Below are positions 1 to 63,030 of a stretch of DNA of 64,000 nucleotides, piece by piece. This DNA comes from Selaginella moellendorffii (lineage: Eukaryota > Plantae > Lycopodiophyta). The stretch lies in contig NW_003314262.1 of the NCBI RefSeq assembly GCF_000143415.4, positions 3,026,603 to 3,090,602 of the forward strand, written 5' to 3'. The notes below the pieces were generated by a model. It made no database searches, had not been told where the DNA came from, and saw only the letters and a program-made list of their open reading frames with translations. Positions within the stretch are counted from its first letter, which is position 1. The number at the start of each line of letters is the position of its first letter. A program made the position numbers and the translations under genes.

Positions 1-925
1 GTGCTACCACGATTCATAGAAATATTAGCTTGGACAATATTCAATACCTCTCTTGATGGAAGCATGTTATATACATGCTTCCAATTGGGATCATAAGCCT
101 CATGTACTTGTATAGCATTGGTCTCGAAATTCCAAGGTAAGTTGCAAGGTAATTAGTAGTTTTAGTCTAGAGAATTCAAGTAACAAAATTAATTAGACTT
201 CCAAAGCCTCGCAACTATACAAATTTAGTACACAATTAGTATGACAATAGATAATTTAACTTACCTCAAAAACATCTCTATCCTCAATGGTCTCACTCTC
301 AACACTTGATTTATCAGAAACATTAATGCCATGATATACAACACTATGTTCTTCATCCTCCATTAGACTTGCTTCTCCAATTAGATAAGGAAAAGCCTAC
401 ATAAATCAGGTGGTTCCACACACACCATTAGGAAATACTTTAGGCCAAAACAGTTTCAACATTGCAACCGAAAAAATAAATGATCTACAAACAGGAAATA
501 GACTTCACCTCCTACCAGAAAAACTGCCAGTTGAATCCTGTCTTGGGTAGCAACATTAGAGACCAGGACAAGCTACCAACCCTAAGTTAACAAGTCAAAG
601 TTATGCCAATGAATGAATGGTCCATGCATACGTGTGTATGAGTGATAATGGAAACATGCCATGGCCATCCGATGGGCATATTATGGCCATAAAATTATAG
701 ACGAATTGGAAGACAACATGTCAGTTTTTGCATATGATCATCCACACACAATTTATAAATTGAACACCATAACTTCCTCTTTTTTTAACCGATGCTACAT
801 TAGCCCTTTGATTCTACCTGAGGTAGATAGTTCAAGCCTCTCTCACCCCATGTTTATCCCAATAAGTTTGCAATTTTATTTAAATCAGATTTAAAATCAC
901 AATTCATTTTGTGCCTCCAATTTGG

Positions 926-1245
926 TTAGTTCTTGATGCAGTGGTCCTTTGCTCCATTTCCAGCCAAACTGGCATTGGTGGCACTTGTTGTTGTACCAGT
1001 ACCAGTTTCTCAGGCAACTCACGCATTTGCTTCCACTCCACTTCCATCTGGAGAGGCATCGGTGGCAATCGCTGCTATACCAGTACCAGTCTTTGGGACA
1101 CTGGATGCACTTATGGCCGTCCCAGTTCCATCCAGATTTTGCATTGCCAGTGGGCTGTTGCGTTGGTGGTCCCACTGACGTCCACTCCAACCAGGAGGAT
1201 TGTCACAAACATGGCCAGAAGCATCAGCTGGGACTTGCTCGCCAT
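926..1245 (-). pseudogene. Frameshifted copy of the secreted Cys/Trp-rich repeat peptide (type A, 5 modules)
   Basis: ATG at 1245 gives MASKSQLMLLAMFVTILLVGVDVSG, a near match to the signal peptide of the 2708-3016 copy. Relative to that copy there are two single-A insertions in A runs (~1137-1140 and ~948-950). The five C-x10-C modules appear in ORF 897..1190. Confidence 0.8.
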
Positions 1246-1832
1246 TGTATTGTCAATTTAGCAATATAAACTAATTTCTTTTCTTGTATCCCTTCTTTGC
1301 TTTGCTGTATTATGGTGCCAATTTATATGGAGGATTTGAGGCTGAGTCTAAGTAACAATGCTATGTACACGGTTTTTACTGCTTCTCGGGCATGATATGT
1401 CGTGTTTGATTGACGGGGTCAAGAAACAAGTGTACGACTTTATCCAGATGAAACAACCTCGAGTTTCGTTGTGAAATTATCAAAAATATCCCGGTGACTA
1501 TAAAAATGTTTATCTATCTATCTATCTCGTTGCGATCAATCACTATTTTATATGAATTGCCTCATATGCATTAAAAAATATGATAATGTTTTCAAAAGTG
1601 AACGCACTTATTGATATGGTGGAGAAAAGGCCTCCAAGCTTCTAAACATTCCGAAAAAACTTTATGAAATATTAGAAAATGAAACTCAAGCAGCAAGGCA
1701 GGATGAAATCTCTTCCGATCCTGCCAAGGAAATGGGACTTCCGCTACCATAGAATGGACGACACAGTTTATTTACCAAAAGGTTATTACAATTGGCTATT
1801 ATACAAGTTTCAGCATGGAAATGATGGGCAAT

Positions 1833-2106
1833 TCAGTTCTTACAGAACCTTCCAGTCCAGTGCCAGCCCCTTTTCGCATCGGTGGCAACCGATGTCATAC
1901 CAGTGCCAACAGAGCAGTGGTGGCAAGAACTGGTATACCAGAACCAGTACTCCGGGCATCGGTGGCAGGAATTGTTGTACCAGAGACGCACTTCTTCCTA
2001 ATCGTATCCCAGTGCCACCCCGACTTGCATTCCCACGTCAGGGCGCTTGCATTTGCAATGCCTCCCACCAGGAGCACCGCCTCACGCACTTCTTGTTGCT
2101 CGCCAT
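1833..2106 (-). pseudogene. Degenerate copy of the secreted Cys/Trp-rich repeat peptide (type B)
   Basis: It starts MASNK like 3659-3886, with deletions in the signal region. CKSGWHWDTIRKKC and fragmentary WYNNSCHRC, WFWY and GWHWTGRFCKN modules lie in shifting frames. Flanks match those of the 3659-3886 gene. Confidence 0.75.
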
Positions 2107-2707
2107 TTTCTTAAAACTCTCCTCTTGCCTCTGTCTCGACTTGCAAACGATAAGAAACTTTGAGTGCTAATCCTGTAAGACGTGGTCACCGCCTAGAACT
2201 GTAAATCCTCCCATCCAACACTTCAAGCTTCTTCAAGTTAGTTCAGGGCTACTCATTGACAATATCTACGTTAAAAAAAGCTGTGATACAATGTGGCCTT
2301 GGCTTGGACTGGGTACCGATTGATCCAGATTTGGTCCTTGCGTTTGAGACAACACAATCCTGTGGGGAAGGATGGAAACCAAGTGAACTAGAAAATTCAC
2401 GTAAACTTTTCTTGAAGTTTACCTCAAACAATGTCGAAAAGATGACATAAACACTTCTCTAGTAGCTTCTCTTGTACTAAAGCCTTCCTTTGTGTTCGTG
2501 GAGTATCTTGGCTGGAAGTAAAAATTAGTCGTAGAATGCAGCTAATTATTCACGCAGGATAAATAAAGGTTAGAAAGAAAGAAAGCAGGGCAGTCTGAGG
2601 TCGGGAGTTCGAGCATCTCTCACATCTTTCATATACTTTCATAACCAAATGGACATTTGGTCACAATTATTTTGTGACGATCCATTAAATATTGGATTCC
2701 AACTTGG

Positions 2708-3016
2708 TCAGTTCTTGATGCAATGGTCCTTGCTCCATTTCCAGCCAAATTGGCATTGGTGGCACTTGTTGTTGTACCAGTACCAGTTGCTTGGGCAACT
2801 CATGCATTTGCTTCCACTCCACTTCCAACCGTAGAGACATTGGTGGCTATACCAGTACCAGCCTTTGGGACACTGGATGCACTTGTGGCCGTCCCAGTTC
2901 CAGCCAGATTTGCATTTCTGCTGGGCTGCTGCACTTGCGATTCCACCAACGTCCACTCCAACCAGGAGAATTGTCACAAACATGGCCAGAAGCATCAGCT
3001 GGGACTTGATCGCCAT
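2708..3016 (-). CDS. Secreted Cys/Trp-rich modular repeat peptide, 102 aa (type A)
   Basis: Single-exon ORF MAIKSQLMLLAMFVTILLVGVDVGGIASAAAQ followed by five C-x2-G/N-W-x-W modules, with a hydrophobic signal peptide. TATAAAT lies ~90 bp upstream. Confidence 0.85.
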   Translation of the reverse strand: MAIKSQLMLLAMFVTILLVGVDVGGIASAAAQQKCKSGWNWDGHKCIQCPKGWYWYSHQCLYGWKWSGSKCMSCPSNWYWYNNKCHQCQFGWKWSKDHCIKN

Positions 3017-3106
3017 TGTATCGTCAATAGAAATGCAAACTGATTGCTTTTCTTGTATCTCTTCTTTCACTTGATGCTGGGTTATGGTGTTGCCAATGTG
3101 GGACCA

Positions 3107-3113
3107 ATTTATA
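3107..3113 (-). promoter_or_regulatory. TATA box of the type-A peptide gene (paralogous box at 1321-1327)
   Basis: CCATATAAAT is conserved upstream of both type-A copies. Confidence 0.55.
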
Positions 3114-3658
3114 TGGAGGATTTGAGGCTGAGTAAGACGGCTATGCACACGGTTTTTACTGCGTCTCCGGGACGACATGTCGTGTTTGTGCTTGATTGAC
3201 GGGGTCAATCCAGATGAAACAGTCTCTATTTAAGTCCCGTGAAATCATCAAAAGACAATGCATTAAAAAATATGATAATATTTTTAAAAGTAAATAGCTA
3301 GAAACTGCAAGAAATTTATGAACCGTAATTTCTTAAAGTCCACTCATACTTGTGGCCAAACTAAGAAGCATGATTCACATTTCCCTCTCATCTCTTGTCT
3401 CGAGTATGAAACTCAGCAGCGCAAGACTTCGGTATTTCGACAATCTTGCTGCTCGAGTTGCTAGAAACTAAAAGTGAAATTGGCAGCAAGTCTCTCGTCA
3501 AGTGGATTCTGGATGAGGAAACCGAGCCTTAGAATGGGATGTCATGGAAAGAAAAGCACACACATTTTATTCACCAAAAGGTTATCACAAGAAACAGCAC
3601 AACCACAATATTTATTGTCGTCGACATATTACATAAGCTTGGATCTTGATGGGCAACT

Positions 3659-3886
3659 TCAGTTCTTCTTGCAGGAACTTCCAGTCCAGTGCGAGCCCAT
3701 CTTGCAGCGGTGGCAAGAATTGTTGTACCAGTACCAGTTTGGCGGGCAATAGACGCACTTCTTCCCATCCCAGTGCCCCCCCGGCTTGCATCGCCCCTGG
3801 GCGCTCGCACTTGCAATTCCTCCAATGTCAACTCCCACCAGGAGCACCACCACAAGCATCGCCAGCAGCATCTTGTTGCTCGCCAT
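3659..3886 (-). CDS. Secreted Cys/Trp-rich modular repeat peptide, 75 aa (type B, 3 modules, 6 Cys)
   Basis: MASNKMLLAMLVVVLLVGVDIGGIASASAQ-GR-CKPGGHWDGKKC-VY-CPPNWYWYNNSC-HR-CKMGSHWTGSSC-KKN; intact ORF. Confidence 0.88.
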   Translation of the reverse strand: MASNKMLLAMLVVVLLVGVDIGGIASASAQGRCKPGGHWDGKKCVYCPPNWYWYNNSCHRCKMGSHWTGSSCKKN

Positions 3887-4308
3887 CTTTTTTAAGAACG
3901 CCTCTTGCTTTGATGTGATCCCAGACTTGTGAACGAGATCGGAGAAAGCTAGAGAAACTTGGAGGAGCTTGAATGTGAGCTTTGATGTGCTTGAGTATGG
4001 AGTGGGAGGATCTATAGTGCAGGAGAGCGTGTTATAGTTCCGGATAACTCGCTGACTTTTTCGACGTTGAAAAGTAAAATGTCAAGCCGCGCGGATACGG
4101 ATGTAGATCTTCGACCGTGTCAAGCGCGAAGTCAGACGTTTTGGGTATTTGTGCTTTCATTGTAGTAAAAAACATTAATGTTTTACAACGTCTGGAGTAA
4201 AATGGGTTTGCCAAAACATAATTCTTGCAAATGCTATGCTTGAGAATCTTTTAGATTCATGACTAATGGGGAATGTTATTGAATGAATTTCTTCCGCTTT
4301 TAATAAGC

Positions 4309-7300
4309 TCAGCTCCCAGACTGCATTTTTACCTGGATTTGCCTGTGCACGTAGACAAGGAACTCCACATAAGACGAGCCCAGCCCGCTCTTGTCTTCGA
4401 TCATGAAGGAGTGGAACATCATCTCTGTAACAAAACCGAATGAGCAAGAGTGCCTCGAAAAAGAAAAAAATGAGAGTGTTTGATCACCTAAAGGATCTCC
4501 CCGCTTCAGCAAATGCAACCTAGAATAGCAAGCATCCGCATTAGAAAGACTAGTGAGAGTTTTATTTTATCGAAACATACCGCAGGTAAGAGCAGCGTTG
4601 GCGACGGATCTCGTTCACCATCTTGTTCAGCAAAATTGATGGCTCGTTATCGTACTCTTGCAACAAAAACTGCAAAAGAGAAGAGTAAGAAAATTACGAG
4701 TCATACGAGCGAGGGAATGAAGTACCTGTCCGGGAATCACTTCGTTCACAGACCGCACTTCAAAGAGTTGATGAAGGAGCTCAGAGGAGACAGCCTTCCC
4801 TGCGTATAGAAAAGCGTCCTCACCGGTCTCCAAAAGAAAGATTCCTTCTGGGTCCAGGTTCTCGCTTGATAGAGGAAGCGTCGGTGGTAGACTCGACTCG
4901 TCCAGCTATGCAAAACGCGCCTTTAATCAGAGTACCAAAGAGATAACTAGTACCTTTGGTATGTTGTGGACGGAAAATAGTCTGGGATACACCAACGGTA
5001 TCGCGAGGGATGCCGAGATGCTTGTAGCTCGCATAAGCCAGTAAGCTCGTTCATCAACACGAACATCTTGCCGGAGACCCACGCTCTTTGTAAGAGCTGT
5101 AAAGAAGGAAACGAGATTGTGAAAAGTTAAAAAAACAAACGAAACGAAACTTACCGAGTGTATATAGCGGTAGCAGCTTAAGGCATTCGGGCAAGATAAG
5201 CTGGCCCGAAGAAGATGCAGTTGCGCAAAACTTTCTATACGAAAACAAGCTCTGAACGCACTGTCCAATGGTTTGCTCCCTAACTTGCGAAAGAGGGGAG
5301 ACAGGCACGCCTTGAGCAGCTGTATCAAAGGCAATTTCAGAACCTTGAACGAAAATCACACAGATTACTTACCAGTTTTCAAAAGATAAGTGAACTGTGC
5401 ATCTAGATCCGCGCCTTTGAAAAGGTTGCTCAGAACGTTCGTGCAGGTAAGTGATAGTGTACTAACTCTGATACGTCTATGCCCATCGACCGTGGTGTAG
5501 AGTAACGCCGACTACAAAAGCATTAGACAAGTTTGGCAATAGTCAGAACAGGCAATAGCATTATGTAAATGCAAGCGCACCTGAAAACAACAGTCCGCTC
5601 CTTCTTGGAATTTGTCTTCGTGCTTGAACGTGACCAGAATAGATTTATCACAATCAATCTAGAAAAACACACTGCATTACAGGAGCTTAGTTCCATGTAG
5701 ATCAATTACCGCAGGAAGATCGACATCAGTGGTAACCCGTTTACAGCTGCCAAAGTAGTCCTGGACTTTGATTCCCTACAAGAGAGATTCACACAGGTTC
5801 TAACCAGTTCATGTCTTTTACCTGACTACATCGCACACGCATCACGGCTTCAAGTCCTTGAGGTCTGGTTAAGTTCCATCGTAAATCATTATACAACTTA
5901 GCTGAATCCATGGTAGCAGAGAAGGGAAAATAATAATAAGCCTGAAACGATGTCAGTCGGACAAAAGTAAGGAGATTGACAGTAACATACTTGACCTCCA
6001 GTTGTGATGGGCACAACTGAAAGTGATGCTATATCGACGTATGTTTGGGTTGTCAAAAACAAGTCCACGCAAACCTGCATGATCGAAAGCTTACATGTTG
6101 CAGGGACAAACCTAGTTGCTTGGTACCTGGGACGAAGAAAACTCCTCTGCCATGGCTTTCAAAGTTTTATCTGCAGGTTGTAACACCTTGTGCGCTTCCT
6201 AAGAATAAAACAATAGAGTCACATGCCAAACAAGTAAATCTCCATACCGCAGATTTGTCTCGCGCCTCTGCCTCCCTTGGGGTTAAAGCTCCAAGGCCAA
6301 TAGATGGTAAAACTGCAAAGCCCATTTAAGAACGTTCGAAACAAAAGCTTTAGTCCATAGTACCTGATTGGAAAACTAAGAGCTTTCCCCCAGTAGGTTT
6401 CAAAGCCAGAAATGACCCCTGCAACAGAATAACACCTTGTATCAAGGTATCTAACTTAAAGCCCAAGCACCTTCATTGCTGCACCAAGAGCTGATTCCTG
6501 AACCACGTTGTCATGAAACATGTTGGGTATGTTCTCCAAAAGAGTTTCCATGTGCTCGCGGCCCTTCAATCATCAAAGATGAATACAGAAACTAGAAAGG
6601 TCAACTACAAACCTCAGCGACAGGAACCACAAGTCCGTTTTCAACTGGAACATATACGTCTTGTATGTCTGGCACTACGAGCATGGATGGCTGTCGATAT
6701 CGACTTAGGAAGGATTTGAATAAAAAGAGAACATTATCTAAACCTGTTGCAGGTCTTTACTCAAATTGTAGAAGTGTATAGTTGAATCAAACGTTGCAAC
6801 TCCAACCATTGTCCTAGGACCTTCCTGAACGTAAAGCAAAATCTTGAATGATTCAAGTAGCACAAAAAACTATGCACCGAGCTTACTGCAATATCCGCCA
6901 GAACTCTCTGAATAGCACTGCAAGCTGCGGCGGCCGCTCCCGTCTTGATAGCATTAGCTGAGACATCCACCAGAAAGAAGAACACTGGTGGCATTGGAGG
7001 TCGAAGCTACAAAATTTATTTTAACTCTTACGACTGTCTGTATATTGCTAATACGTACCAAATACTCTTGGGTTGCAACGAACTCGACTGTTCCACGAGA
7101 GAGTTCAGGCCTGTCGTCAGCGTCTCTCCTTCGTCCATCCGGTCCGAGGTTGCAAACGTAATCTCGCGGAGTTTCGTTTGTGTGTCCTGTTGATGTAGCA
7201 CGTTAGATTTCATGCTTGCATAGAAAACATCTTACCACAAATATTGCAAACAAAACGGCGTCCTTGGTCGATAAACTTCATAAAGGAATTAATGTATGCT

Positions 7301-8528
7301 TTACATCTATTGCACCGAACTGGCCCACTTTCTCCAAAGTCAACAACCTGCCAAGCATTTGAGCTACCAAAAACAACAATCTTTGCTTCTCTTGAGTACC
7401 TTGATAGGCTCTTCATTCACGTGAGGGAGGGCGAGTGGCTGAATTATCAGAGCCAGAGGCATTTTCGAGGTGTTTAGCAAATCCGCGGTGCATGGAACCT
7501 AAGTTTCTCACAATCAGAACACCAAAAACACCAGTGTTTACCACCTTACCTGATAAAGAGTGCTTCGCATAATCCTTGGGCTACAGTTTCCGGCATCTCT
7601 CACGTAAAAATCACTCGTCGAAGACTGCATCGAAGGAAAAAGTTATAAAAGGAGGAACACAAGAGTTTTCGCAGACTTACCGGAGGAATTGGACCGCTAG
7701 AAACTGTATCATAAACGGACGTAGCGAAGCTCGGCTGGGGGCGGGGAATTTGCGATGGATCAATGCGTTGCGAAGGAGTCGTAGAGGGAGAGCCAGGCTG
7801 CTGTAAATTATCTCCAATCTAGCAACAGAGAAAACAAGCATTAGAGAGCTCTCTCCAAAAAGCCCGATACTCACAGAGGGTCTCCAATTCTGGCCAGGAG
7901 GAGGCGGCATTTGCGAGTAACCAGGCCCTGGCGGCCGGCTTAGAAACTGTGGAGGCTGGAGAGGAGGTCCTTGCATCTGTAGAGGCTGTGGAGGAGCTTG
8001 AGGATGGCTCTGGAATGGCTGCGGCGGCTGTCCCTGGATCGAGGAGGGGTGGCTCTGGAAAGATGGAGGCCCCTGGATTGAGCTCTGGAACGATGGAGGA
8101 GGGCCCTGGAACTGGGGAGGCCCTTGGATCGACGCCGACTGGCTCTGGAATGGCGCCGGCATGCCTGAATTCGCCTGGAAGCTCGAAATTTCCTGTCCTG
8201 ATCCCACTCCCGGGCCCTGGAATGGACGAGAAGGCGGCGCCATACCTTGGAATGGAGGCGGAGGTCGCAGAGATCCGCCATACTGTGGCCGAAAACCTAC
8301 CATGCCCGGCTGATTCGACGCGCCATACTGTGGCACTGGCGTAGCTCCAGCTCCGGGAGGAGGAGCAGCGGCCTGAGATCCCGGCAGCGGCGGTGGCGGC
8401 GCAGATCCATACGGTGGCGGCCGGATGAAGGATCCATCGGGGGGAGCTTGCGGCGGCATAGATCCATACTGTGGAGGGAATCCGCCGGGCCGGATCGGGG
8501 CTCCATACTGCGGTACCTGGGAGCTCAT
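4309..8528 (-). CDS. SEC24: COPII coat subunit SEC24C/D-like (CEF-type), about 20 exons
   Basis: Pro/Gln-rich N-terminus; zinc finger [13 protein letters not shown]...FVCNIC; trunk domain [12 protein letters not shown]; [13 protein letters not shown]; [17 protein letters not shown]; C-terminal [22 protein letters not shown]. Probable 5'UTR intron 8534-8805. Confidence 0.95.
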
Positions 8529-26636: not shown

Positions 26637-26778
26637 GACAAAGAGAAAAGGGGGAGAGGTTTACAATTAGGGTTAGGGTTCCTGGCGCTTGGAATGGGCT
26701 CCGCGATCATCAGGTACTCGCCTAGATCTTAGCACAGGAATTCTCGAGCTTGGGAGGGATTTCGATCGAGCAAGAACG
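26637..26778. promoter_or_regulatory. Ultra-short bidirectional promoter UBA5/MFAP1 with telo-box
   Basis: There are 142 bp between the two ATGs, with TTAGGGTTAGGGTT at ~26667-26680. Confidence 0.6.
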
Positions 26779-28200
26779 ATGTCAGTCTCGGCGGGAGTGA
26801 CAGACGTCGCCATAGCCGTGAGGGAAAAGCTGCGAGGGAAGATCGGCCAGACCAAGGTCCAGCGCTACTGGCCGGGCAAGAAGCCAGAATGGGCGGCCGA
26901 GGAGGAGGAGGAGGAAGAAGAGGAGGAGAATTTCGAGAAGAAGAAGAAGAAGCCGGAGCCAGAGAAATCGAAAGCTCCGGTGGACGAGAAGGAGGTTGCT
27001 GCCGCTAGACCCGCTGCGAGGGTGGAGGATGATCCTCGGCTCCGGCGGCTGGCCGAGAGCCGGAGGAACCGCGATGAGGCGGTGGCGAGGCACAGGGAGA
27101 TCCGGCAGGCGGAGATCGTGTCCACCCGCCAGGAAGAGAAGTCGGGCGCCAGAGATGCTGGAGCGGAGGAGGTGGAGGACGAGGAGGCGGTGGAGGAGCG
27201 GCGGAAGAAGAACAGGGAAAGGATTCTACAGAAGCAAAAGGAGGAGGAGGAGGCCGCCGCTGCCGCCACGGAGGAGGATGAAGAGGATGGAGAAGAGGAA
27301 GAAGACGAGGAAGACGAGGAGGAGGAAGAGACCGACTCGGAGGACGAGCTGGGAGGGATGCCGATGATGAAGCCAACTTTCGTGAAGAAGTCCGACCGGG
27401 AGACCATCGCGGAACGCGAGCGGCTCGAGGCGGAGGAGATTGCAATGATGGAGGATTGGAAGAAGAAGCTGGAGCTGCGGAAGATCGAGTCCAAGCACCT
27501 CCTGGTGGAAGAGATCCGGAAGGAGGAAGAGCGCGAGAAGAACAAGGTGACGGACACGAATGGTGACGAAGTTAACACCGACGACGAGACCAACGGGCAA
27601 GAAGAGTACGAGGCCTGGAAGGCGAGAGAGATCGCGCGGATAAAGCGAGAGAGGGACGAGAAGGAGAACGCCAACAAGGAGAAGGAGGAGATCGAGAGGC
27701 TGAGGAAGATGAGCGAGGAAGAACGCAAGGAGTACGATCGGAAGAACCCAAAGGAGGCCCCGGCTCCGAAGAAGAAGTGGAAGTACATGCAAAAGTACTA
27801 TCACAAGGGAGTGTTCTTCATGTCCGACGACAAGGATCCGGCTGTTCCTGGAGGGAACGACATTTACAAGCGGGACTACTCGGAGCCGACTGGAGAGGAC
27901 AAGCTCAACAAGAGCATACTCCCGAAAGTGATGCAAGTCAAGAACTTTGGCCGCAGTGGGCGAGTGAAGTGGACGGATCTCGTGAACGAGGACACGACGC
28001 GATGGGACACGCCGTGAGTTTGTTCTTCCCTCGCCTTTGATTCGTTCTAATCGAAGTTTTTCCGGCCTTTCAGGTGGAGCTCCAATGACAAGTTTCGTGC
28101 GCAGTACAACAACAAGATGGCCGGGATGAACAAGCCGATCGAGAAGCCTCGGGGCACCAAGAAGATGAAGAGGAGCATCGAGGAGATGTACAAAGTTTGA
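26779..28200 (+). CDS. MFAP1: Microfibrillar-associated protein 1 (spliceosomal B-complex factor, Spp381 homolog); 2 exons, intron 28014-28073
   Basis: MSVSAGVTDVAIAVREKLRGKIGQTKVQRYWPGK, EYEAWKAREIARIKR, KYMQKYYHKGVFF, ILPKVMQVKNFGRSGRVKWTDLVNEDTT. Confidence 0.95.
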
Positions 28201-28302: not shown

Positions 28303-31266
28303 TCATACACCGAAAGGAAGCCACCGACGTTTCGGCCTTGACAACTTAGAGTCGAGTGAAGAGCCTGTGTGTGTTTCATCGTCATCAGTAGAACGTAAGA
28401 GTTCCTCCTCTTCATCCTTTGTCTCGGGGCATGGAGTTTGAGAGTTCTCGCTTTGACCCCCCTCTGTATCAGTTTCTATAAAACTTCGATCCACCGAGAG
28501 GCTTTCCTCAGCTTTTTCACTCTCTTTTCCAGGAGATTCGTCATCATTCCTTCCAAAACTTTGGTGGCTTTCGTTGTCCCCATCATGAAAGTCATTCTGT
28601 AAGAGTTTTTCATCATCGCCCACAGCTTGCTCGTCCTGTTCCTTTCTCAAGTCGCCGTCCAGGTCGTCACAGTCTCTTGCAGAGCTTTGATCCGGCATGA
28701 GACTTCCATCATGGCTACCAGCTTGTTCATCTTGTTCCTCCCTCTCTGGACTGTCACCATTCCTCGGGCCTGGACTTTCAACAGCGTTTCCAGCTTCTTG
28801 CTTGCTGCTGCTGCTGCTTCCATCTTCCTGGACCAACTTTAGCAGCTTGCCAGACTCGTCCGACTTGCGAAGTCCGTCCAAGATCGCTGTGAAAGTAGCA
28901 GCATGAGGAGGAGAGCCGCCAGCAGCCATCTCCTGTAAAAGCTCCTGGGCCTTCTCAGTCTTCCCGGACCTCACCAGGCCATCAAACAGCGAAGCGGATG
29001 TGACGGCAGTGGGAACGTTGCCTCTGGAGATCATGTCCTCGAACAGCTTAAGCGCCGCGTCCACTTTCAAAGCCTTGCAAAAGCCGTGGATGAGAGCGTC
29101 GTAGATCATGACGCTTCCAACAAGCTCGCCCCGAGCAAGCATGCCCTCGAACCTGTGGAACGCCTCGTCGACGTTCCCGGCATGGCACAGCGCCTGGACG
29201 AGTGCCGTGTACGTAGCAACCGTCGGCTTCTGGCCTTTGCCGATCATCTCGTCGAAGAACTTGCAAGCGTCTTCCAGTTTCTTCCCCTTGATCAGCCCGT
29301 TGATGATGCAGCAATAGGCAGCAGCGTCCGGAGCACCACCCTGGCGGACCATCTCTTGGAACAAGCTCACTGCTCGATCGACTTGGCCTTGATAGCACAA
29401 GCCCGTGCATAGAGCAGTGTAAGCCACTACGTCGGCGTTCCAACCCCGGCTAGACGCCTCCTCGAGCATCTTCACAGCTCTGTCAACTTCGCCAATCTTG
29501 CACAGGCCGATGCAAAGCGGGGTGTAAGTCACGGCGTCTGGCAAGTAGCCAACCATCTCGAGGTCGTGGAGCAAAGCGAATGCCCGCTCCACTCGGTTCT
29601 CTCGGCTCCTGCACAGCCCGTTGATCAGGATGTTGTAAGTCGTTGCGTCGGGCTTGCATCCTTCCGACACCATTCTCTGGAAAATCCTGCAAGCTTCGTC
29701 GAGCCGGCCGGTCTTACACAACCCGACGATGATGCTGCAGCACAGGCCGGGATCCAAGTTTTCTGCTGCGGCTTTGCTCTGCTCGAATAGATCGTCGAGT
29801 GTATTCTCAACGCTGCCACCATCGCACAGTCCCTTCACAAGTGACGAGTAGAGCTGTAAGTTTGGAGAGCTGGAGCATTTGTCAAGCTCGTCCAAGAGCT
29901 GGGCAGCCTCGTCGAGCCTCCCGAGCTTGCAGAAGCCATCGAGAAGGCAAATGTACGTCACAGAATCTGGAAAACATCCATGAGCTATCATCCCTTTCAT
30001 AATCCTGAAAGCATTGGCCACTCTCCCGATCTTGCTGAGGCCCTGGATGATCGTCGTGTAAGTCACCACGTTTGGCTTGCACCCGCCTCGCATCATCTCC
30101 TCAAAGCTCTTTGCAGCTTGCTCAAAGTTTCCCGACTTGCACAGCCCGTCTATCATAACCGTGTGGGTGATCACGTCTGGACGGTACCCGGCCTCCACCA
30201 TTTCGTCAAAGAGAGAGCAAGCCTCTTTCATTCTTCCCGACTTTGCAAATCCGTGGATGAGAGACGTGTAGATGACTGAATTCGGCCGAAAACCACTAGC
30301 TGCCATCACTCGGAACAGCTCCTCGGCCCGTTCCAAGGTTCCTGCCTTGCAAAGACTGTTCACCAGAATCCCATACGTGACTTCTGTTGGAACACAAGCT
30401 TTCGCGAGCATATTGTCGAGAACCTTGAGAGCTTCTTGTGCATGGCCAGCTTTGGCGAGCCCGTCGATCATTGTGTTGTAAGCAATAGCGTCGGGAGGGA
30501 AGCCACACTTCTCCATCTGTCCGAAAACCTCTCGAGCTTCCTTCACTCTTTTCGCTTTGAGCAGCGTTCTCACCATCGCGGTGTGAAGTGCCCGATCCGG
30601 AGGAACGAATCCCATTGCCATCATCTCGTGAAAAACCTCGAAAGCCTTCTCGTCCATCCCAGCCTTGCACAGGCAATCCACAAGGATGAGAAACGTATGC
30701 AAGTCGGGCTTACACCTCTTCCTCTTCATGATCTCGAAGCACGTCACAGCGTCGTCGGCCCGGCGCGTCCTGGCGAAGCTCCGGATCAAGATGTTGAAGG
30801 AGAAAGTGTTGGGCGCGATCCCGGCCTTGAGCATCTCCTCGTGGATCGCGTAGCACTGCGAGTAGTTCTTCTCGGCCACCAGGAGATTCATGAGGCAATT
30901 GTAAGTGAAGACATCGTGCTGGAATCCCGCCTGTTCTCCAGCCCATCGGAAGAAACTGATAGCCGTCCCAGTGACCTTGAGCGATCGCAGCACCGCTGCG
31001 ACGTGGGATCCAAGCACCTGGCCGTGGACGGGGCCGAGCACGTTGCGGATATTATGGACCGACCAGGAGCTGCCGTCGAGCCTCACGTCCTTGATCGTCT
31101 CCACAATCGAGGTCACCAGATCAGCGCGACGCACGAAATCGGGCGTGAGGTGCTCGCGCTCTGGCTTACCGCTGGGGAAGCTCCTGGCGGTGTAGTGGCG
31201 GACAATCGCTCGTCCTCCTCCTCGATCAAGCAGCAGCAGCCATAGCTCGCGCTGCCGCAAAGACAT
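28303..31266 (-). CDS. P-class pentatricopeptide repeat protein, 987 aa, intronless, with an acidic C-terminal tail
   Basis: About 19-20 consecutive 35-aa PPR motifs (e.g. TYNCLMN, AYNTMIDGLAKAG, TYTTIIQGLSKIG) and a FFRWAGEQAGFQHD N-cap. No E/DYW domain. Confidence 0.95.
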   Translation of the reverse strand: MSLRQRELWLLLLDRGGGRAIVRHYTARSFPSGKPEREHLTPDFVRRADLVTSIVETIKDVRLDGSSWSVHNIRNVLGPVHGQVLGSHVAAVLRSLKVTGTAISFFRWAGEQAGFQHDVFTYNCLMNLLVAEKNYSQCYAIHEEMLKAGIAPNTFSFNILIRSFARTRRADDAVTCFEIMKRKRCKPDLHTFLILVDCLCKAGMDEKAFEVFHEMMAMGFVPPDRALHTAMVRTLLKAKRVKEAREVFGQMEKCGFPPDAIAYNTMIDGLAKAGHAQEALKVLDNMLAKACVPTEVTYGILVNSLCKAGTLERAEELFRVMAASGFRPNSVIYTSLIHGFAKSGRMKEACSLFDEMVEAGYRPDVITHTVMIDGLCKSGNFEQAAKSFEEMMRGGCKPNVVTYTTIIQGLSKIGRVANAFRIMKGMIAHGCFPDSVTYICLLDGFCKLGRLDEAAQLLDELDKCSSSPNLQLYSSLVKGLCDGGSVENTLDDLFEQSKAAAENLDPGLCCSIIVGLCKTGRLDEACRIFQRMVSEGCKPDATTYNILINGLCRSRENRVERAFALLHDLEMVGYLPDAVTYTPLCIGLCKIGEVDRAVKMLEEASSRGWNADVVAYTALCTGLCYQGQVDRAVSLFQEMVRQGGAPDAAAYCCIINGLIKGKKLEDACKFFDEMIGKGQKPTVATYTALVQALCHAGNVDEAFHRFEGMLARGELVGSVMIYDALIHGFCKALKVDAALKLFEDMISRGNVPTAVTSASLFDGLVRSGKTEKAQELLQEMAAGGSPPHAATFTAILDGLRKSDESGKLLKLVQEDGSSSSSKQEAGNAVESPGPRNGDSPEREEQDEQAGSHDGSLMPDQSSARDCDDLDGDLRKEQDEQAVGDDEKLLQNDFHDGDNESHQSFGRNDDESPGKESEKAEESLSVDRSFIETDTEGGQSENSQTPCPETKDEEEELLRSTDDDETHTGSSLDSKLSRPKRRWLPFGV

Positions 31267-32338
31267 AAAAACCTAACCCTTGGTGCTCATAGCTCGAATG
31301 TATCAGTCCGCGCTCTCCCTGCTAGAATGTAGCCCTCTCCGCAGAAAGGTATAAAGAAGCATATTCCTGTCCTAAACCCTAAACCCTATGAACAAATATC
31401 TTTTTAAGAATATGCCAGGCAAAAGAAAAGAAGCATAAATATTGTTAAGAATTTTTTTTATATTCCTACAATTTCCAATCTGCCTAGAACCAGAATGCAA
31501 TGAGGCTTTAGATGCATTTGGCCTCACGAGACAGACTTGCATTTGAAAGATCTTGTGTAGACATTTCGAAAGAGAATCAACATGGGCAGATAGCAAATTT
31601 TCTATTGCCACAACTTAGCCTTTGAGGATTTCCCAGCTCCGAGAGAATGACTCCATAGCCACAATGGCTATGGAGAAAATATTTGGACAATTTTCTTTAA
31701 AGGAACTCTGGGTTTCCCCTGGTTTTAGAATAAGTCACCAATGTGTGATGTCCTTAAAAAGAAGAGGTAGATTGGGAATTATTGAAATTGTAAAGGTAAA
31801 TTGGGAAATGCTAAAATTTTACTAAGTAGATCTTAAAGAGTTTATTCTAATATGTTGTAAAATTCTAGCAAAAAAGAAAAACCTTCTCTCCATTCTTAAT
31901 TTATAAATTATTATTAAAGTAAGCTAAAAAAGTAAAAATAAATTACTCTATTTAGAATATTTACAAAGGGAAAACATATCCACGTGTTTATCACTAATTT
32001 TTCTCTTTTTGTGTTTTCATTTGCTACAAGAATGCCGGGGAAGAAGCCAAATAACCACTTCAAATGTTCTTTGTTTTCCACCCCAAATATAAAATTACAT
32101 CTTAAATCAATTAGTTTTTATTTCTCATTAAAAATAATGGATGTGGAATAGAAGCAAACATTCACAACAATAAGTGGGTGTAAGTTATGGGATTCTTCCA
32201 ACATAACTATATAAGCTAGAAAATTTTGTAAATGCTATATATTATTCTTGTATTCACTTTCATCTTTCACATAGAAAAGAACAATTGTAGAATATTTGTG
32301 GTAATATTAAAACTATCTGAGTTTCAAGTAAACTCATT

Positions 32339-33211
32339 TTGAAGTCTATAAATCAGCTAAACAATGATACAAAATTAAATTTTATTTTTATTATAGTTTT
32401 TCTTTTTCCAACATATGTTATAGCACCAATTTATAAACCAAAGTTTGGGAGATTTATAATTTTAAATCCTCAGGACATTGTAAAAACTAGTACAATATTT
32501 CAAAAGCTATTATCTAAATTATATTATAATAAAATATATCCTATGGATTATTCAGATGGTGAGCTTATTAGTACTTCAGTAGGAATTCTTGATTTCAGAT
32601 TCAAAACAAAGTATGAATGTGAAAATGAAGAAACAATTACAAGTAAAATTTTGATAGCTGCTTTTGAAAGGATTTTTTATGCAAATATTAATGATATACA
32701 ACTTAATTGTCCAGACTATTTTGAAAATGAAAATAAAGGATATTTTATGCAATATAAATTAATTCAAGAGTGGGTATTTCATAATAGGTTACAATTTAAC
32801 TTTAGTGAAACTTCTAATCCTGTATGCTTTCTTAGACAACATACATTATATAATCCACAACAACTACAATAAAATCAATATTTATTTTCTCTAAATGGTA
32901 AAGTTATTTTAAGGGTAACATCAAATTGTCAAGTTATTATTTTCTATAAAACCATAAAGATATGGGGAACAAAAGTTTTTATAAACTATGATACTATTTG
33001 TGTACTAAAACTCCAAAATGATGGTAACCTTGTCTTATATAGTAATAAAAGAGTATTATGGGGAACCAATAAATACTGTTCTAATCAACCTAATTGTATA
33101 ATATTTTCATACTTAACTATTCAAAATGATTGTAGTTTAAAAATTTACCTAGCAGCATATCCTAATGTTATTTGGTGGATTTTACATAGTCATTACTTAT
33201 GTTTAACATAA
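32339..33211 (+). pseudogene. AT-rich chimeric bulb-type (GNA/B-) lectin ORF interrupted by one TAA (32870-32872)
   Basis: The frame of ORF 32339..32872 continues past the stop as NQYLFSLNGK...IWGT...LKLQNDGNLVLY...LWGT...LTIQNDCSLKIY. The QxDxNxVxY motif is at 33014-33040. No in-frame ATG precedes the hydrophobic N-terminal segment. Confidence 0.7.
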
Positions 33212-34577
33212 TTTCTTTATTCAACATATCTGAATGCTATCATTTTTATTATTATTTATTTTAAATATAAAAAGGAACTTTTACTCTCATTATCCTAGTA
33301 TCTTTTACCATCTAATTCTTGATACTTATGCCATAATTTGAATGAGTAGTTTTTCTTTGCAAATTACTATTTAAGTAGGTATTTGATTGACTGAAACACA
33401 GTGATCTCCCTTATACTACTTAAGTCAATGTTTCACATGATGCTAGAGCCATTGCTATATAACATTTTTTTGCAGCCTTCTAGCCACCCTAAGCCACTTT
33501 ACTCCAATGCTCATAACCCATGAATTAGAGATATTGAAGGATTATAGTATAAAACTAGTGTATAATAATCCTTCCTCCAACCCTATAACCACTTTTTAGC
33601 ATCTTTAAAATGCCCTAAGGTTTAAGGAGACAGTTTTCTTCCTCACCAAGTCCCTCCCAATTCATGGTAGAAGGTCTACTAAGTTTTAATGACCTTTAGA
33701 ACTTCCTCACTCTGTAATAATACTTTTGGTTATTAAGCAAAAGGATTAATCATTTTTGTTTCCTCACAATTAGAGATTTCAAGATAATATTTTAAAACAT
33801 TATAACCTAATACAAATTTTGTGGGTACTCCCACTACCTTCACCACCAAGATGCCCTAACCATGTGGTTAGAATAAACTTTCCAATGCTGCACATGTGAC
33901 CATTACAGTCAAATTGTGACAGCCATATCAACAATTTGAAGTGAAGTTGCCCTAGTACATGTCACCGTCATTGTCATTTTTTTGACAATGGCCTTGTGAT
34001 AATGAAATCAATTTGAATGATTTTTAAAACTGGCCCAGCTGGTTGACCACTATCAAACCTGCAATAGTAGGTTAAAGTGCTATTGCTGATGTGTCAATTT
34101 TTTGTTTTAGGGTTGAGTGAGTAGCAGTTGAACAACTTGGAGATCATGTTCTCCACTCAATATCAACAAGAGTTTCTATATTATAGTTCTCAATTCAGCA
34201 AGGGGAATTTTATTGCTCCCACTCCACTGAAGCCTCCAAAACCAGCTAGAAATCAGGGGCATTGGTCTTTGAATGAATTGTTGATTCTGAATGAAGCAAA
34301 GAAGCATGATTTCTTCTTATAGCAGTGAGGTAGCATTCAGGAGAGGCACAAAAAAAGATTGCAGTTGTTCATTAACAACAAGTCTCCGAGTAAGTTTTGG
34401 ATTTTTTAGACTTCTAGTCATTCACTAAGTTTGCAACTACTGTTTGACACATGGTGTCAACCATTTGCTTGGGCAATGCCAATCTCGGTGGGAGTATATC
34501 TACAAAGAGTTCAACAAAATCAAGTCATATAAATATCATGTTCCTACTAGCAGAAGCAGTTACTAGAACATGATAAT

Positions 34578-37500
34578 TGTAAGTGACTAAATTTTCCATT
34601 CTACTTTAGTCACTTAACCACACCTCCGACCACTTGGAGGAGTCTCACTCACAACCTCCATAAGTCCTATTTCGGACTTGGGGACTTGCTAGCCCCAAGA
34701 ATGGCATCCATGCCACTCAACCGTTGCATTTGGTCCAAGTGCTCCATGTGTCTGGTCCCATGACCGACACCCAAAGGTACCACTGACAGTTCAGCCCGTT
34801 ATGCTAAGGCCATGCCCATTCACCTTTGCTGCACTGGTGGTCCAATACCACTTGCATCACAGTCCCGTCTCTCCAAGACTGGGCCATCCGTCCACGAGTG
34901 GTCTTCCCAGATCCACTCCTTAGCATCCTTAGGATGCCCATAAACATGGGGAATAACCTTCCCCAATATCCCTTTCTCAGTTCCTACCAAGTCCCTTTTC
35001 TATCCATGACCATGTTTGCCAACACTACCACTAGATCAAGGCCCGCAGGCCCGGCCACTAAGTCCCATTGTCCTCTGGGACTTCTTCACCATGTGACCGT
35101 ATCTTTAGTCACTACACTAGAGGACTGCTCCTCCTCCTTTCCCTAGTTTGGGACTTTGGGACAACATTTCGGAACACCATGGCCCTACACGAGCCCCGTG
35201 GGTACTCTCCCCACCTTCCGCCTTTAGGTGCTCTAGCCATAGGCTTAGAGCGAGGTTCCGTTGAGCCACGCTAGGTATCCAAGTAGGTAGTACCACCCAC
35301 ACTTGGACTGAGAGCATCGGCCAGTCGATCTCCCGAGGGAACTAGAGCTGGCTTTTGAACACTTCACCAAACTACCCCACTTGTCGGTCCGTATTCACTC
35401 TAGTCTTGGACTTCCCAATGGATATCCCATCACCAACACTTGGGCACGGCCTTCCTGGGCCAAACTGGCTCCATTGGAGTTCTCCCCCTACTATACTTTT
35501 GGAGCTCACTAAATCCCCCAAGGTCTGGGAGACGAATGCTTTGGGCTTTCACCCTCTCAGACTCGAACTCGGACTCAGACTCGGACTCGGACTCAAACTC
35601 GGGCTCGGTCCTGGCCTTCGCCTCGGTCTCGGTCTCGGTCTCAGTCCCAATCTCGGTCTCGGTCTCAGTCCCGGTCTCGGTCTCAGTCCCGGTCTCGGTC
35701 TCAGTCTCGGTCCCGGTCTCAGTCTCGACCTCGGACTCCATCTCGAGTCCTTCTCGAACTCCATCTCAGATTCCATCTCAGGTCCATCTTAGACTCCATC
35801 TCGGACTCCGTCTCGGTCCATCTTGGACTCCATCTCGGGTCCATCTCGGACTCCATCTCGGACTCCATCTCGGACTCCACCTCGGGTCCATCTCAGACTC
35901 CATCTGGGACTCCACCTTGGGTCCATCTCAGACTCTATCTTGGACTCCACCTCGGGTCCATCTCGGACTCCACTTCGGACTCCACCTTGGGTCCATTTCG
36001 GACTCCATCTCAAACTCCATCTCGGGTCCATCTCGGACTCCACCTCAGACTCCACTTTGGGTCCATCTCAGACTCCATCTCGGGTCCATCTTAGACTCCA
36101 CCTCGGACTCCACTTTGGGTCCATCTCAGACTCCATCTCGGGTCCATCTCGGACTCCATCTCGAGTCCATCTCGGACTCCACTTCGGACTCCAACTCAGG
36201 TCCATCTTGGACTCCATCTCAGACACTTCCATGTGTCATGTGTTGGTCCTTTTGGGTCCCTTTTTTGGAGCTTTGCTTATTGCTCGCTTTGTGCTCGTTC
36301 CTCGAGCACCTTGTTGGGAGTTCCACTCCCACTCTCAACTTTTCAAGTTGGAGGTTTTGGTCCAAACGTGTTACGCTTGTTTGGCTTTCGCTTTGGCCAC
36401 TACCACGTAGCACCCTTCCGGCTCCACTTTGGGGCCTAGGGATTTTGTGTCTCACAACTCCACCACACATAGACGAAGTTCGATGTCCTCATCGAACGAT
36501 AAACTATTTTATAAAGTAATACCAACATGTATTACCCTTTCTATTCTTAGCATCTCGCCAATATTTGTTAATGGTTATATACCGAAGGCTCACCATACCT
36601 TGCCCTTCTTCCAAGGAGCATAATCTCTCCAAATTAGAGACTGATTGGACTACTTGTGGTGGTCCTCTCCTTTTATTAGTGTAGTTCTTGCTAAACCTGT
36701 TAAAGACACCGTCTCTATCTCAACCCCACTACTCCTTCTCAAGTAGTCTCAACTTTTATTAATATAACCAGTTCACCTTGGAACTTTTAATTTTGACTCT
36801 CAAAGTCAATTTCCTTGGTGTTTCTAACACCTTTCATTGCACATATTATGCAACTTCACTTCCCCATCCTAAGAAGTTCTTTACTTGAGGGCACCATCAT
36901 CCTCTCTTATATTTCGTGCCACCTTAGGCACTAAGTTCCAGTTATCATACTTTGTGCTAGGGCTGTCCATGGACCTATCATTTGGCTACTTTGCCACTCC
37001 CTCCTTGGAAATTTCACCTTTGCCAACTTGGAGCATTTGGGAATCCATCCTTGGAAGCACACTTCCTTTCTCACCATCCGTTAGCATCTAACACCTTAGT
37101 GTTCCATGCCTAACTTTGCCATTTGGATTCTCTCTAATGAACTCTATGGCTCATGCTTGGCCACTAGTCTTTTGCTCCTATCCTTGATTGTTGCACCCAG
37201 CAACATAGGATCGCTACCTCCATTCTCAAGGTATCCTTTCAGTCCCATAACAAACACTTTGCTTTGCCAAGTCCAAAGGGTGTTCACCCCTAGTATGTCT
37301 CTTTAACATTTTCTACTGTGGGCTCTATCCATGGCCCAACTTTGAGACCCTCCCATGAATCTATTATAGAGACTACTTTCCTCAGACTTACTATACCATC
37401 GCATTGACATAGCTTATTTCTCTTAGGTGTTCTTCCCACTTGGTCACCTTGACCAAGCCCCACCACCATCAACAGTTTCAATCAACATTTTGAACTAAAA

Positions 37501-49330: not shown

Positions 49331-49624
49331 TTGGGGGCTAATAAATATCACAAGTGATTTTTTACCAAAGTTGCTCATGTAATGAATAACTTTGAGTTAG
49401 GGACTAAAATACATACCTTAGTTTAGACTTCACCCAAGGTTACTAACCCTTAATTCTAACTTGGTTTGAGAGCACCACTAGAGAGTGCCTTCAAAACTAA
49501 CCTCACTATCTTTATTATACTTTTGGAATCCTTTATAGTCCTTTGCCCATAAAATTTTACCCTAACAAGTCTTAGATTCAATTTGGACTCAGTTTTAAAC
49601 TGTAAACAACTAAAGAGAACCACT

Positions 49625-62984: not shown

Positions 62985-62986
<2 letters not shown>

Positions 62987-63028
<42 letters not shown>
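62987..63028. repeat. (AT)21 microsatellite
   Basis: Directly visible. Confidence 0.95.

Positions 63029-63030
<2 letters not shown>

What the first reader, a model, noticed from the sequence alone, without database searches (positions are those of the whole stretch)
926..3886. Family of secreted Cys/Trp-rich peptides built from a 14-aa disulfide module (top candidate for a novel system)
Seen in sequence: four paralogs share a signal peptide ending GGIAS.AQ, followed only by tandem 14-aa modules C-x2-[G/N]-W-x-W-x4-C-x2. Modules alternate between a CxxGWxW[D/S/T]GxxC type and a CPxxWYWYNNxC type. There are 3 modules in one intact gene and 5 in the other. The mature peptides are cationic and rich in Trp/Tyr. 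The Cys spacing (C-x10-C-x2-C) fits none of the plant CRP classes I know (defensin, thionin, hevein, knottin, LTP, snakin, RALF, alpha-hairpinin). Inference: each module may be a disulfide-stapled beta-hairpin with WxW on one face, reminiscent of the CPxGW hairpins of peritrophin-type chitin binders and C-type lectin N-terminal loops. That would suggest a multivalent carbohydrate (chitin) binding or membrane-active defence peptide whose valency is set by module number.
Basis: partly seen in the sequence, partly recalled or inferred. Interest (0 to 1): 0.85.

Follow-up and report, generated by a model that had tools for sequence, protein, structure and literature searches.

The report
Selaginella secreted Trp-rich hairpin-repeat peptides
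A clubmoss (Selaginella) gene cluster encodes small, secreted, positively charged peptides made of 3 or 5 tiny disulfide-closed tryptophan-rich hairpins; at least one is strongly expressed, the family is missing from protein databases, and its job (probably defence) is untested.

Summary
On the minus strand of 926-3886 lie four paralogs. Two are intact: C (2708-3016, 102 aa, 5 modules) and D (3659-3886, 75 aa, 3 modules). Two are broken: A and B. Each has a signal peptide followed only by 14-aa modules that alternate strictly between two types.

The genome is Selaginella moellendorffii or a close relative. A fifth intact copy lies at another locus, where it is mis-annotated.

- **Expression:** raw RNA-seq reads show D as an intronless, strand-specific, highly expressed transcript. 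B is silent.
- **Selection:** paralog dN/dS in the mature part is 0.15-0.47.
- **Fold:** AlphaFold2 gives confident models (pLDDT 82-86) with one beta-hairpin per module.
- **Family membership:** no Pfam family reaches threshold and no plant CRP family appears. The module consensus nevertheless matches a widespread single-disulfide repeat class (DUF5874-like CPxGQxWNGxxC repeats; TNFR, furin-like and ephrin-receptor-like rods).

I read this as an undescribed lycophyte-specific CRP family built from a module type known elsewhere. It is not a new fold. Function is inferred only; defence by binding microbial surfaces or membranes is favoured. Unverified first-reader notes of this scan report the same motif at other loci of this genome.

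The parts
3659..3886 (-). Gene D CDS: 75-aa precursor with a 29-aa signal peptide and a 46-aa mature peptide of 3 modules (a-b-a, 6 Cys)
   Evidence: ORF. The RNA is stranded, with depth up to 355 and no splice joints. AF2 pLDDT is 82.
3556..3991 (-). Transcript of gene D. The 5' end is near 3991. The 3' ends lie between about 3638 and 3556. AATAAA signals start at 3616 and 3571 (minus-strand coordinates, reading downward). A TATA-like CTATAGAT lies about 25-30 nt upstream of the 5' end.
   Evidence: Read starts and ends and the depth profile; motif scan.
2708..3016 (-). Gene C CDS: 102-aa precursor with a 71-aa mature peptide of 5 modules. A 3-aa deletion at the module 2/3 junction leaves 9 Cys.
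   Evidence: Only 1-3x RNA depth, and those reads carry the variants of another copy or allele.
3108..3113 (-). TATAAA box 97 nt upstream of the ATG of C, inside a promoter and 5'UTR block conserved with copy A (TATA of A at 1322-1327)
926..1245 (-). Copy A: a C-like 5-module gene broken by two one-base frameshifts (A-runs at about 1137-1140 and 948-950), with degenerate residues at motif positions
   Evidence: Three-frame reading. RNA reads laid here all differ from the window at 1008, 1012 and 1049, and 28 of 29 lack one base at 948. They therefore come from intact close copies elsewhere.
1833..2106 (-). Copy B: a D-like gene with at least 5 module remnants, several frameshifts and a truncated signal peptide; a pseudogene
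   Evidence: zero RNA depth.
2303..2542 (-). Degraded pectinesterase remnant between C and B. It is context rather than part of the peptide genes, and it explains the chimeric RefSeq model XP_024531936.
   Evidence: tblastn of P0001 residues 180-244 gives 41% identity.

Best explanation
This is a tandem cluster of a Selaginella-specific family of secreted cysteine-rich peptides that appears in no protein family database.

How the peptide is probably made:
- Each gene is intronless and encodes a cleavable signal peptide (likely cut after A-x-A, leaving an N-terminal Gln).
- The mature part is a stiff, cationic chain of 14-aa modules.
- Each module is a beta-hairpin (W-x-W strand, 4-residue turn, C-x-x strand) that is most likely closed by its own C-x10-C disulfide.
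- Two module types alternate, so the evolutionary unit is a 28-aa (84-nt) pair. Copies differ by such units (3 versus 5 modules), probably through unequal recombination.

The family evolves by birth and death: a two-gene unit was duplicated here, and one copy of each gene has decayed.

The most likely role, by inference only, is extracellular defence. The aromatic-and-basic surface would bind microbial wall polysaccharides (chitin or glucan) and/or membranes, with avidity set by module number.

What is shown: the genes, their expression, selective constraint, the predicted hairpin-per-module architecture, and the module's likeness to DUF5874/TNFR-A1/furin-like repeats.

What is inferred: secretion, disulfide pairing, and the function.
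For: - **Anatomy:**
- **Organism and extra paralog:** P0001 and P0020 are S. moellendorffii proteins whose N-termini match this family. An intact 99-aa, 10-Cys paralog lies at L001:10001-10297, mis-modelled as a spliced 157-aa protein.
- **Expression:** D has depth up to 355 in X22 with 12% of the run read, roughly 165 reads per kb per million. All first mates lie on +, the boundaries are sharp, and there are no joints. D is about 10x lower in X21, where A-like copies are about 10x higher than in X22, so the copies are differentially regulated.
- **Constraint:** dN/dS in the mature region is 0.16 for E-C (dS 1.19), 0.15 for C-A, 0.24 for C-D and 0.47 for E-D.
- **Fold:** AF2 gives pLDDT 86 (76 aa) and 82 (46 aa), with two short strands per module.
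- **Nearest shapes:** R-spondin furin repeats, the insulin-receptor CR domain, the TNFR family members HVEM and 4-1BB, the mGluR/CaSR Cys-rich domain, and ELAPOR1/ephrin-receptor-like/VSP/DUF5874 clusters.
- **Module likeness:** hhalign score 105 against 15-34 in controls.
- **Charge and aromatics:**
- **Birth and death:**
- **Absence from databases and literature:**
Against: - There is no functional evidence of any kind: no tissue or condition metadata for the RNA runs, no peptide data and no binding data.
- The invariant Trp (position 7) is also the conserved Trp of the DUF5874-like repeats, so it may be structural (packing on the disulfide) rather than a ligand contact.
- All structural matches are weak (Foldseek E>=0.05, TM<=0.49, Z<=2.7).
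- Signal-peptide cleavage was judged by eye, since no SignalP was available.
- Disulfide pairing was not read from coordinates.
- Gene C has an odd number of Cys and is barely expressed, so one of the two 'intact' genes here may be decaying.
- The three allelic differences in D are all non-synonymous, but three sites prove nothing either way.
Confidence: 0.5

Rival explanations
1. The peptides are signalling ligands (developmental or reproductive), recognised by a receptor in the way R-spondin furin repeats, EPF/LURE-type plant CRPs or TNFR-like rods take part in protein-protein recognition. Module number and the variable position 5 would tune specificity.
For: The nearest shapes are protein-binding rods such as R-spondin Fu1-Fu2 and TNFR CRDs. 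Expression differs about 10-fold between samples and between copies. Many plant CRPs are ligands (established knowledge).
Against: D mRNA is very abundant. The peptides have a high net charge and high aromatic content, and half the local copies are pseudogenes. These features are more typical of defence peptides than of ligands. No receptor is linked in the window.
Confidence: 0.2
2. The peptides are cell-wall-associated proteins that bind the plant's own polysaccharides (cellulose or pectin) through the aromatic/basic face. They would act as non-catalytic wall modifiers or cross-linkers.
For: An aromatic strip on a rigid rod resembles carbohydrate-binding surfaces (established knowledge of type-A CBMs and hevein, cited from memory). 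Family members sit beside pectinesterase genes or remnants at three loci: the window at 2303-2542, L001 at 6758-7965, and the chimeric model P0001.
Against: The pectinesterase linkage is explained just as well by segmental duplication of one ancestral neighbourhood. There is no binding evidence.
Confidence: 0.15
3. The precursors are polyproteins cut into single 14-aa disulfide-cyclised hairpins, like the Impatiens Ib-AMP precursors or other multi-core peptide precursors.
For: The architecture is tandemly repeated with short units.
Against: There are no spacer propeptides, no acidic linkers and no dibasic or Asn/Asp processing sites between modules. Only two residues separate successive Cys. 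AF2 models a continuous rod with confident inter-module packing.
Confidence: 0.05
4. These are transcribed but functionless young ORFs, or decaying relics.
For: Two of the four copies are broken. C has an odd number of Cys and almost no reads. The family is absent from annotations.
Against: dN/dS is 0.15-0.47 at dS up to about 1.2. All Cys, Gly and Trp motif positions are conserved across unlinked loci. D expression is strong and strand-specific.
Confidence: 0.05

Closest known systems
DUF5874-type repeats (Pfam PF19202): tandem CPxGQxWNGxxCVx modules in bacterial and metagenomic surface proteins and in fungal proteins
   Same: The period is the same (13-14 aa) and the consensus positions agree: C1, G4, W7, [ND]8, G9 and C12, with [IV] at 13. 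hhalign gives 99.3% probability and score 105, against 15-34 for controls that keep the Cys spacing.
   Different: The Selaginella peptides score only 10.7-13.9 bits against a 27.1-bit cut-off. They add a second Trp (position 5) and a second module type (CPxxWYWY) in strict alternation. They are tiny stand-alone secreted peptides rather than parts of 200-1700-aa proteins. Common descent versus convergence is unresolved, and DUF5874 has no known function. The comparison set was also picked from the hits of my own search, so it is selection-biased.
TNFR A1-type, furin-like and ephrin-receptor-like (GCC2_GCC3, ELAPOR1) cysteine-rich rods, for example R-spondin Fu1-Fu2, HVEM and the mGluR/CaSR Cys-rich domain
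   Same: All are elongated chains of short disulfide-closed beta-hairpins with a C-x2-C-x2-G-x-aromatic signature. They give the best Pfam, Foldseek, VIA and Atlas rows.
   Different: Every score is below threshold (Pfam 9-17 bits against 23-33; Foldseek E>=0.05; Z<=2.7; TM<=0.49). Those domains sit in large animal, protist or bacterial proteins and mix one- and two-disulfide modules. Here there are only C-x10-C units with 2-residue links.
N-terminal hairpin of long-form C-type lectin-like domains (LOX-1, NKG2D)
   Same: LOX-1's CPQDWIWHGENC and the type-b module CPKDWYWYGNGC share C-P-x-D-W-x-W-x-G-x-x-C. From memory, the two Cys in LOX-1 form one disulfide that closes the hairpin. That is the pairing proposed here.
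   Different: E is 0.03, which is not significant. The rest of the lectin domain is absent, and in lectins this hairpin is structural rather than the sugar site.
Modular plant defence peptides and lectins: hevein-domain repeats (wheat germ agglutinin) and Ib-AMP polyproteins
   Same: They are secreted, disulfide-rich and aromatic-rich, and their valency is set by repeat number. Hevein also uses a W-x-W strand to stack on chitin (established knowledge, from memory).
   Different: There is no sequence or Cys-pattern relation. Chitin_bind_1 (hevein-type) was not reported even at E<=10. The modules here are 14 aa with one disulfide, against about 43 aa with four.

Membership tests
Known plant CRP classes (defensin/gamma-thionin, thionin, hevein, snakin/GASA, nsLTP, RALF) | A match to the family's Pfam model, or its Cys pattern | tested here: not met
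   hmmscan of C, D, A-mid, E and the mature peptides at E<=10 lists none of these families. The Cys spacing of 10,2,10,2 fits none of them.
Pfam DUF5874 (PF19202) | Whole-protein score of at least 27.1 bits | tested here: not met
   Scores are 10.7-13.9 bits for C and E and 7.8 for A, with no hit for D. Profile-profile likeness to DUF5874-bearing stretches is strong, so the peptides look like the family but membership is not established.
TNFR_ELAPOR1_6th (PF23091), Ephrin_rec_like (PF07699) and Furin-like_2 (PF15913) | Pfam gathering score (33.2, 23.1 and 28 bits respectively) | tested here: not met
   Observed scores are 13.6-17.1, 10.7-15.5 and 8.9-11.2 bits.
TNFR/furin-like cysteine-rich rod fold | Significant structural superposition on solved members | tested here: inconclusive
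   These are the top rows, but Foldseek gives E 0.05-0.6 and TMq 0.33-0.41, VIA gives Z 2.0-2.7, and Atlas gives TMq up to 0.49. Flexible rods superpose poorly.
Secreted peptide (classical secretory pathway) | N-terminal signal peptide with n-, h- and c-regions and small residues at -3/-1 | tested here: inconclusive
   By inspection, C has MAIKS, then a 15-residue hydrophobic stretch, then GGIASAAA before QQ. D and E are analogous. No SignalP-type predictor was available.
Stapled beta-hairpin module (one intramodule C-x10-C disulfide) | Cys1-Cys12 of each module are bonded | not testable with these tools
The analogy to the LOX-1 and mGluR CRD pairings is from memory.
Chitin/glycan-binding or membrane-active antimicrobial peptide | Demonstrated binding or activity | not testable with these tools
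   Only composition is known: pI 9.0-9.4 and 15-22% aromatic residues.

The most novel reading that the evidence does not exclude
A lycophyte-specific family of secreted 'tryptophan-ladder' mini-rods forms a new structural class of plant defence peptides. It would comprise tens of genes if the scan's other first-reader notes hold. Single-disulfide hairpin modules of the TNFR-A1/DUF5874 type, otherwise seen in large bacterial, protist and animal surface proteins, are used on their own as valency-tunable binders of microbial wall glycans or membranes. Module number evolves by unequal recombination of an 84-nt two-module unit.
Probability: 0.3. Interest if true: 0.65.

Novelty: new variant of a known kind. 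Interest (0 to 1): 0.5.

Why it matters
Plant cysteine-rich peptides are a main source of antimicrobial and signalling molecules, but nearly all known classes come from seed plants. This family has several features that make it worth following:

- It is well supported: expressed, under constraint and confidently modelled.
- No correct gene model for it was found in the protein collections searched. The two public gene models that touch it are chimeras.
- It is built from the smallest conceivable disulfide module, repeated 3-5 times. That makes it easy to synthesise (46 aa for D) and a clean system for asking how repeat number tunes avidity.
- It shows that a module type known from large surface proteins of other kingdoms can work as a free-standing plant peptide.

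It remains one of many lineage-specific CRP families in this genome, and no function has been shown.

Tried and rejected
- **Word-indexed homolog searches.** One with C and one with the family alignment found nothing beyond the mis-modelled P0020.
- **Exhaustive phmmer.** It gave only two true relatives, P0001 and P0020, both S. moellendorffii chimeric models. The other 28 hits are repeat look-alikes, including actinobacterial GWTWD repeats without Cys.
- **Exact-sequence look-ups.** D, E and P0001 are not on record.
- **ESM Atlas by features.** No usable hit.
- **PDB by sequence.** Nothing significant.
- **Cluster look-ups of the look-alikes.** They gave no taxa. P0008 proved bacterial from its gene context, so it is not plant kin.
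- **Literature.** Searches for Selaginella with cysteine-rich, Trp-rich, secretome or peptidome terms, for the SELMODRAFT id, and for DUF5874 found no description.
- **BURP-type RiPP precursor.** Considered and dropped. There is no BURP domain, and the Cys-rich contiguous modules are unlike known cores.
- **Zinc-knuckle or zinc-ribbon reading of the CHxC motifs.** Rejected, because the peptides carry signal peptides and the Pfam hits are E 0.07-5.
- **Exons of a larger gene, as in XP_024531936.** Rejected for D, which shows no joints at 355x depth.
- **Not attempted:** complex prediction. Model coordinates could not be read.
Full report
**What is in the sequence**

Region 926-3886 carries four related small genes, all on the minus strand.

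- **D (3659-3886)** encodes 75 aa. A hydrophobic N-terminus ends in GGIASASA, followed by QGR and three 14-aa modules (6 Cys).
- **C (2708-3016)** encodes 102 aa. Its signal peptide ends in GGIASAAA, followed by five modules.
- **A (926-1245)** is a C-like five-module copy. It is interrupted by two one-base frameshifts in A-runs at about 1137-1140 and 948-950, and it has degenerate residues at motif positions.
- **B (1833-2106)** is a D-like copy with at least five module remnants, several frameshifts and a truncated signal peptide.

The cluster is a duplicated two-gene unit. A aligns to C at 82.6% over 530 nt, including the promoter and 5'UTR with a shared TATAAA box. B aligns to D, and patches of the spacer also match.

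**Module structure**

I cut the peptides into 18 modules. Two types alternate strictly:
- Type a: C-x2-G-W-x-W-[SD]-G-x-K-C-[IV]-x.
- Type b: C-P-x2-W-Y-W-Y-x-N-x-C-H-[QR].

Trp at position 7 is invariant. Trp at position 5 is replaced in 3 of 18 modules. The real repeat is therefore a 28-aa a+b pair. The 3-module and 5-module forms differ by one such pair: B has about 80-84 nt more than D.

Gene C lacks three residues at the module 2/3 junction and so has nine cysteines. Three RNA reads from a closely related copy carry ...SNDCHRWLS... at the same place, with Trp where the opening Cys of module 3 should be (loose end at 2846). C-type copies may therefore generally carry an unpaired Cys.

**Organism and other copies**

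An intronless 987-aa PPR gene shows this is a land plant. The only true database relatives are two Selaginella moellendorffii entries:
- XP_024531936, 'putative pectinesterase 11'. Its first 52 residues are a C-type signal peptide plus module 1, spliced onto a pectinesterase.
- EFJ36804 (SELMODRAFT_403507). It begins with the family's signal peptide and half a module.

Both are evidently wrong gene models. At the EFJ36804 locus (L001:10001-10297) there is an uninterrupted 99-aa ORF with five modules and ten Cys, which I call paralog E. The window itself has a decayed pectinesterase fragment between C and B, at 2303-2542.

No correct model of any member exists in the collections searched. First-reader notes of this scan report the same motif at other loci of this genome, one with about 15 genes. 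I could not verify those notes.

**Are they real genes?**

Yes. I laid raw stranded RNA-seq reads of the same species on 700-4200.

- **D** is covered to depth about 355 in run X22, with only 12% of the run read. That is roughly 165 reads per kb per million.
- Every first mate on D lies on the + strand, which means RNA from the minus strand.
- Coverage is zero in the flanking spacers, and there is no splice joint.
- The ends are near 3991 (5') and between 3638 and 3556 (3'). The 3' ends lie downstream of AATAAA signals.
- Two D alleles appear at about 60:40. They differ by A29T, G37W and P48Q. G37W restores the canonical Trp at position 5.
- **B** has no reads.
- **C** has 1-3x depth, and those reads carry another copy's variants.
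- The reads laid on **A** (depth 34 in X21) all differ from the window at 1008, 1012 and 1049, and 28 of 29 lack one base at 948. They encode the canonical P and G where A has L and R. They therefore come from at least two intact close copies elsewhere, and the window's A is a pseudogene.
- D is about 10x higher in X22, and the A-like copies are about 10x higher in X21. The copies are differentially regulated.

Nei-Gojobori estimates for the mature region:

| Pair | dN/dS | Note |
|---|---|---|
| E-C | 0.16 | dS 1.19 |
| C-A | 0.15 | |
| C-D | 0.24 | |
| E-D | 0.47 | |

This is clear purifying selection.

**Fold**

I ran AlphaFold2 on five-row alignments. It gave mean pLDDT 86 for mature E (76 aa) and 82 for mature D (46 aa). 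All five models scored 78-86, and each module has exactly two short strands: W-x-W (or WYWY), then a four-residue turn, then C-x-x.

Searches with the E model returned only weak matches, but they were coherent:

| Search | Best matches | Scores |
|---|---|---|
| Foldseek | R-spondin furin repeats, insulin-receptor CR, HVEM/4-1BB, mastigoneme, CaSR Cys-rich domain | E 0.05-0.6 |
| VIA-align | mGluR Cys-rich domain, HVEM | Z 2.0-2.7 |
| ESM Atlas | ELAPOR1-TNFR-like, DUF5874, R-spondin, VSP, ephrin-receptor-like clusters | TM up to 0.49 |

Pfam gives the same families, all below threshold, and no plant CRP family at all. A PDB sequence search puts the N-terminal hairpin of LOX-1 and NKG2D lectin domains on top. 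CPQDWIWHGENC resembles the type-b module, but at E 0.03 this is not significant.

From memory, that lectin hairpin is closed by one C-x10-C disulfide, as are the consecutive hairpins of the mGluR Cys-rich domain. This is why I favour one intramodule disulfide per hairpin. I could not read the bonds from the model.

**The module is not unique**

The non-Selaginella phmmer hits include long bacterial and metagenomic proteins with tandem CPxGQxWNGxxCVx units of the same 13-14-aa period. Some pass the Pfam DUF5874 threshold. One of the long look-alikes (P0008, no Pfam family at E<=0.001) sits in a bacterial operon context.

Profile-profile comparison of the Selaginella alignment with six such stretches gives 99.3% probability and score 105. 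Reversing the stretches gives 34. Shuffling the columns between the cysteines gives 15-30. The likeness therefore goes beyond the Cys spacing and includes G4, W7, [ND]8 and G9.

Because those stretches were chosen from my own hit list, this shows a shared module consensus, not common descent. DUF5874 has no known function and no literature.

**Function**

Nothing was tested directly. The peptides are 5.4-8.9 kDa with pI 9.0-9.4. They have 8-10 basic residues against 1-3 acidic ones, and 15-22% aromatic residues. They are abundant as mRNA, variable in repeat number, and turning over by duplication and decay.

That profile is most typical of defence peptides. I favour extracellular binding of microbial wall glycans and/or membranes, with avidity set by module number. 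My confidence in the functional claim alone is about 0.35-0.4, and about 0.5 for the whole statement.

One caution: the invariant Trp7 is also conserved in the look-alike repeats and may be structural. The family-specific, more variable Trp5 and the Tyr face of type-b modules are the better candidates for a binding surface.

The rivals are a signalling ligand, a binder of the plant's own wall (suggested by the pectinesterase neighbours at three loci, though these are probably just a duplicated neighbourhood), a polyprotein cut into single hairpins, and functionless relics.

**Novelty**

I found no description in about 8.4 million full texts, and no correct protein record. I file this as a new variant of a known kind. 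It is a lineage-specific plant CRP family with an architecture not seen among plant CRP classes, made from a module type that exists elsewhere.

Noticed in passing
window 2303-2542 (-): A decayed pectinesterase fragment lies between peptide genes C and B. Intact pectinesterase genes neighbour family members at L001:6758-7965 and in the chimeric RefSeq model XP_024531936. This is either an ancestral peptide-pectinesterase neighbourhood that was duplicated, or a functional link.
   Followed up: partly
L001:10001-12028 (GL377566.1) and XP_024531936: Both public gene models that touch this family are chimeras. EFJ36804 splices out of module 1 of an intact 99-aa ORF. XP_024531936 joins a signal peptide plus module 1 to a pectinesterase.
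   Followed up: yes
window about 4150-8528 (-): A multi-exon Sec24-like COPII gene lies directly upstream of D on the same strand. It has a Pro/Gln-rich N-terminus at 7677-8528 and a [11 protein letters not shown] trunk motif at 6761-6994. Transcript contigs of about 3 kb end at 4151-4167.
   Followed up: partly
window 28303-31266 (-) and 26689-28017 (+): There is an intronless 987-aa P-type PPR gene with 17 PPR_2 hits, and an intronless MFAP1-like pre-mRNA-processing gene. The MFAP1-like region is strongly purine-skewed (AT skew 0.35).
   Followed up: partly
window 2846 (loose ends) and 2821-2850: RNA reads from another C-type copy carry Trp in place of the opening Cys of module 3, while the window's C has a 3-aa deletion at the same junction. 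These look like two different lesions giving nine Cys. That suggests either a tolerated or useful unpaired Cys (a covalent dimer?) or parallel decay.
   Followed up: partly
window 32001-34000, 42001-50000, 58001-64000; 34001-40000: There are long AT-rich blocks (28-39% GC), and a 6-kb stretch with strong negative GC skew (-0.19 to -0.28). ORFs there have no Pfam hit. They were not examined, and may be transposon or repeat sequence.
   Followed up: no
The look-up of sequencing runs rows X5 (organism B) and X33 (organism C): Runs labelled as two other organisms hold 36% and 6% of the 31-mers of gene C. This hints at near-identical copies in related taxa or in differently labelled samples.
   Followed up: no
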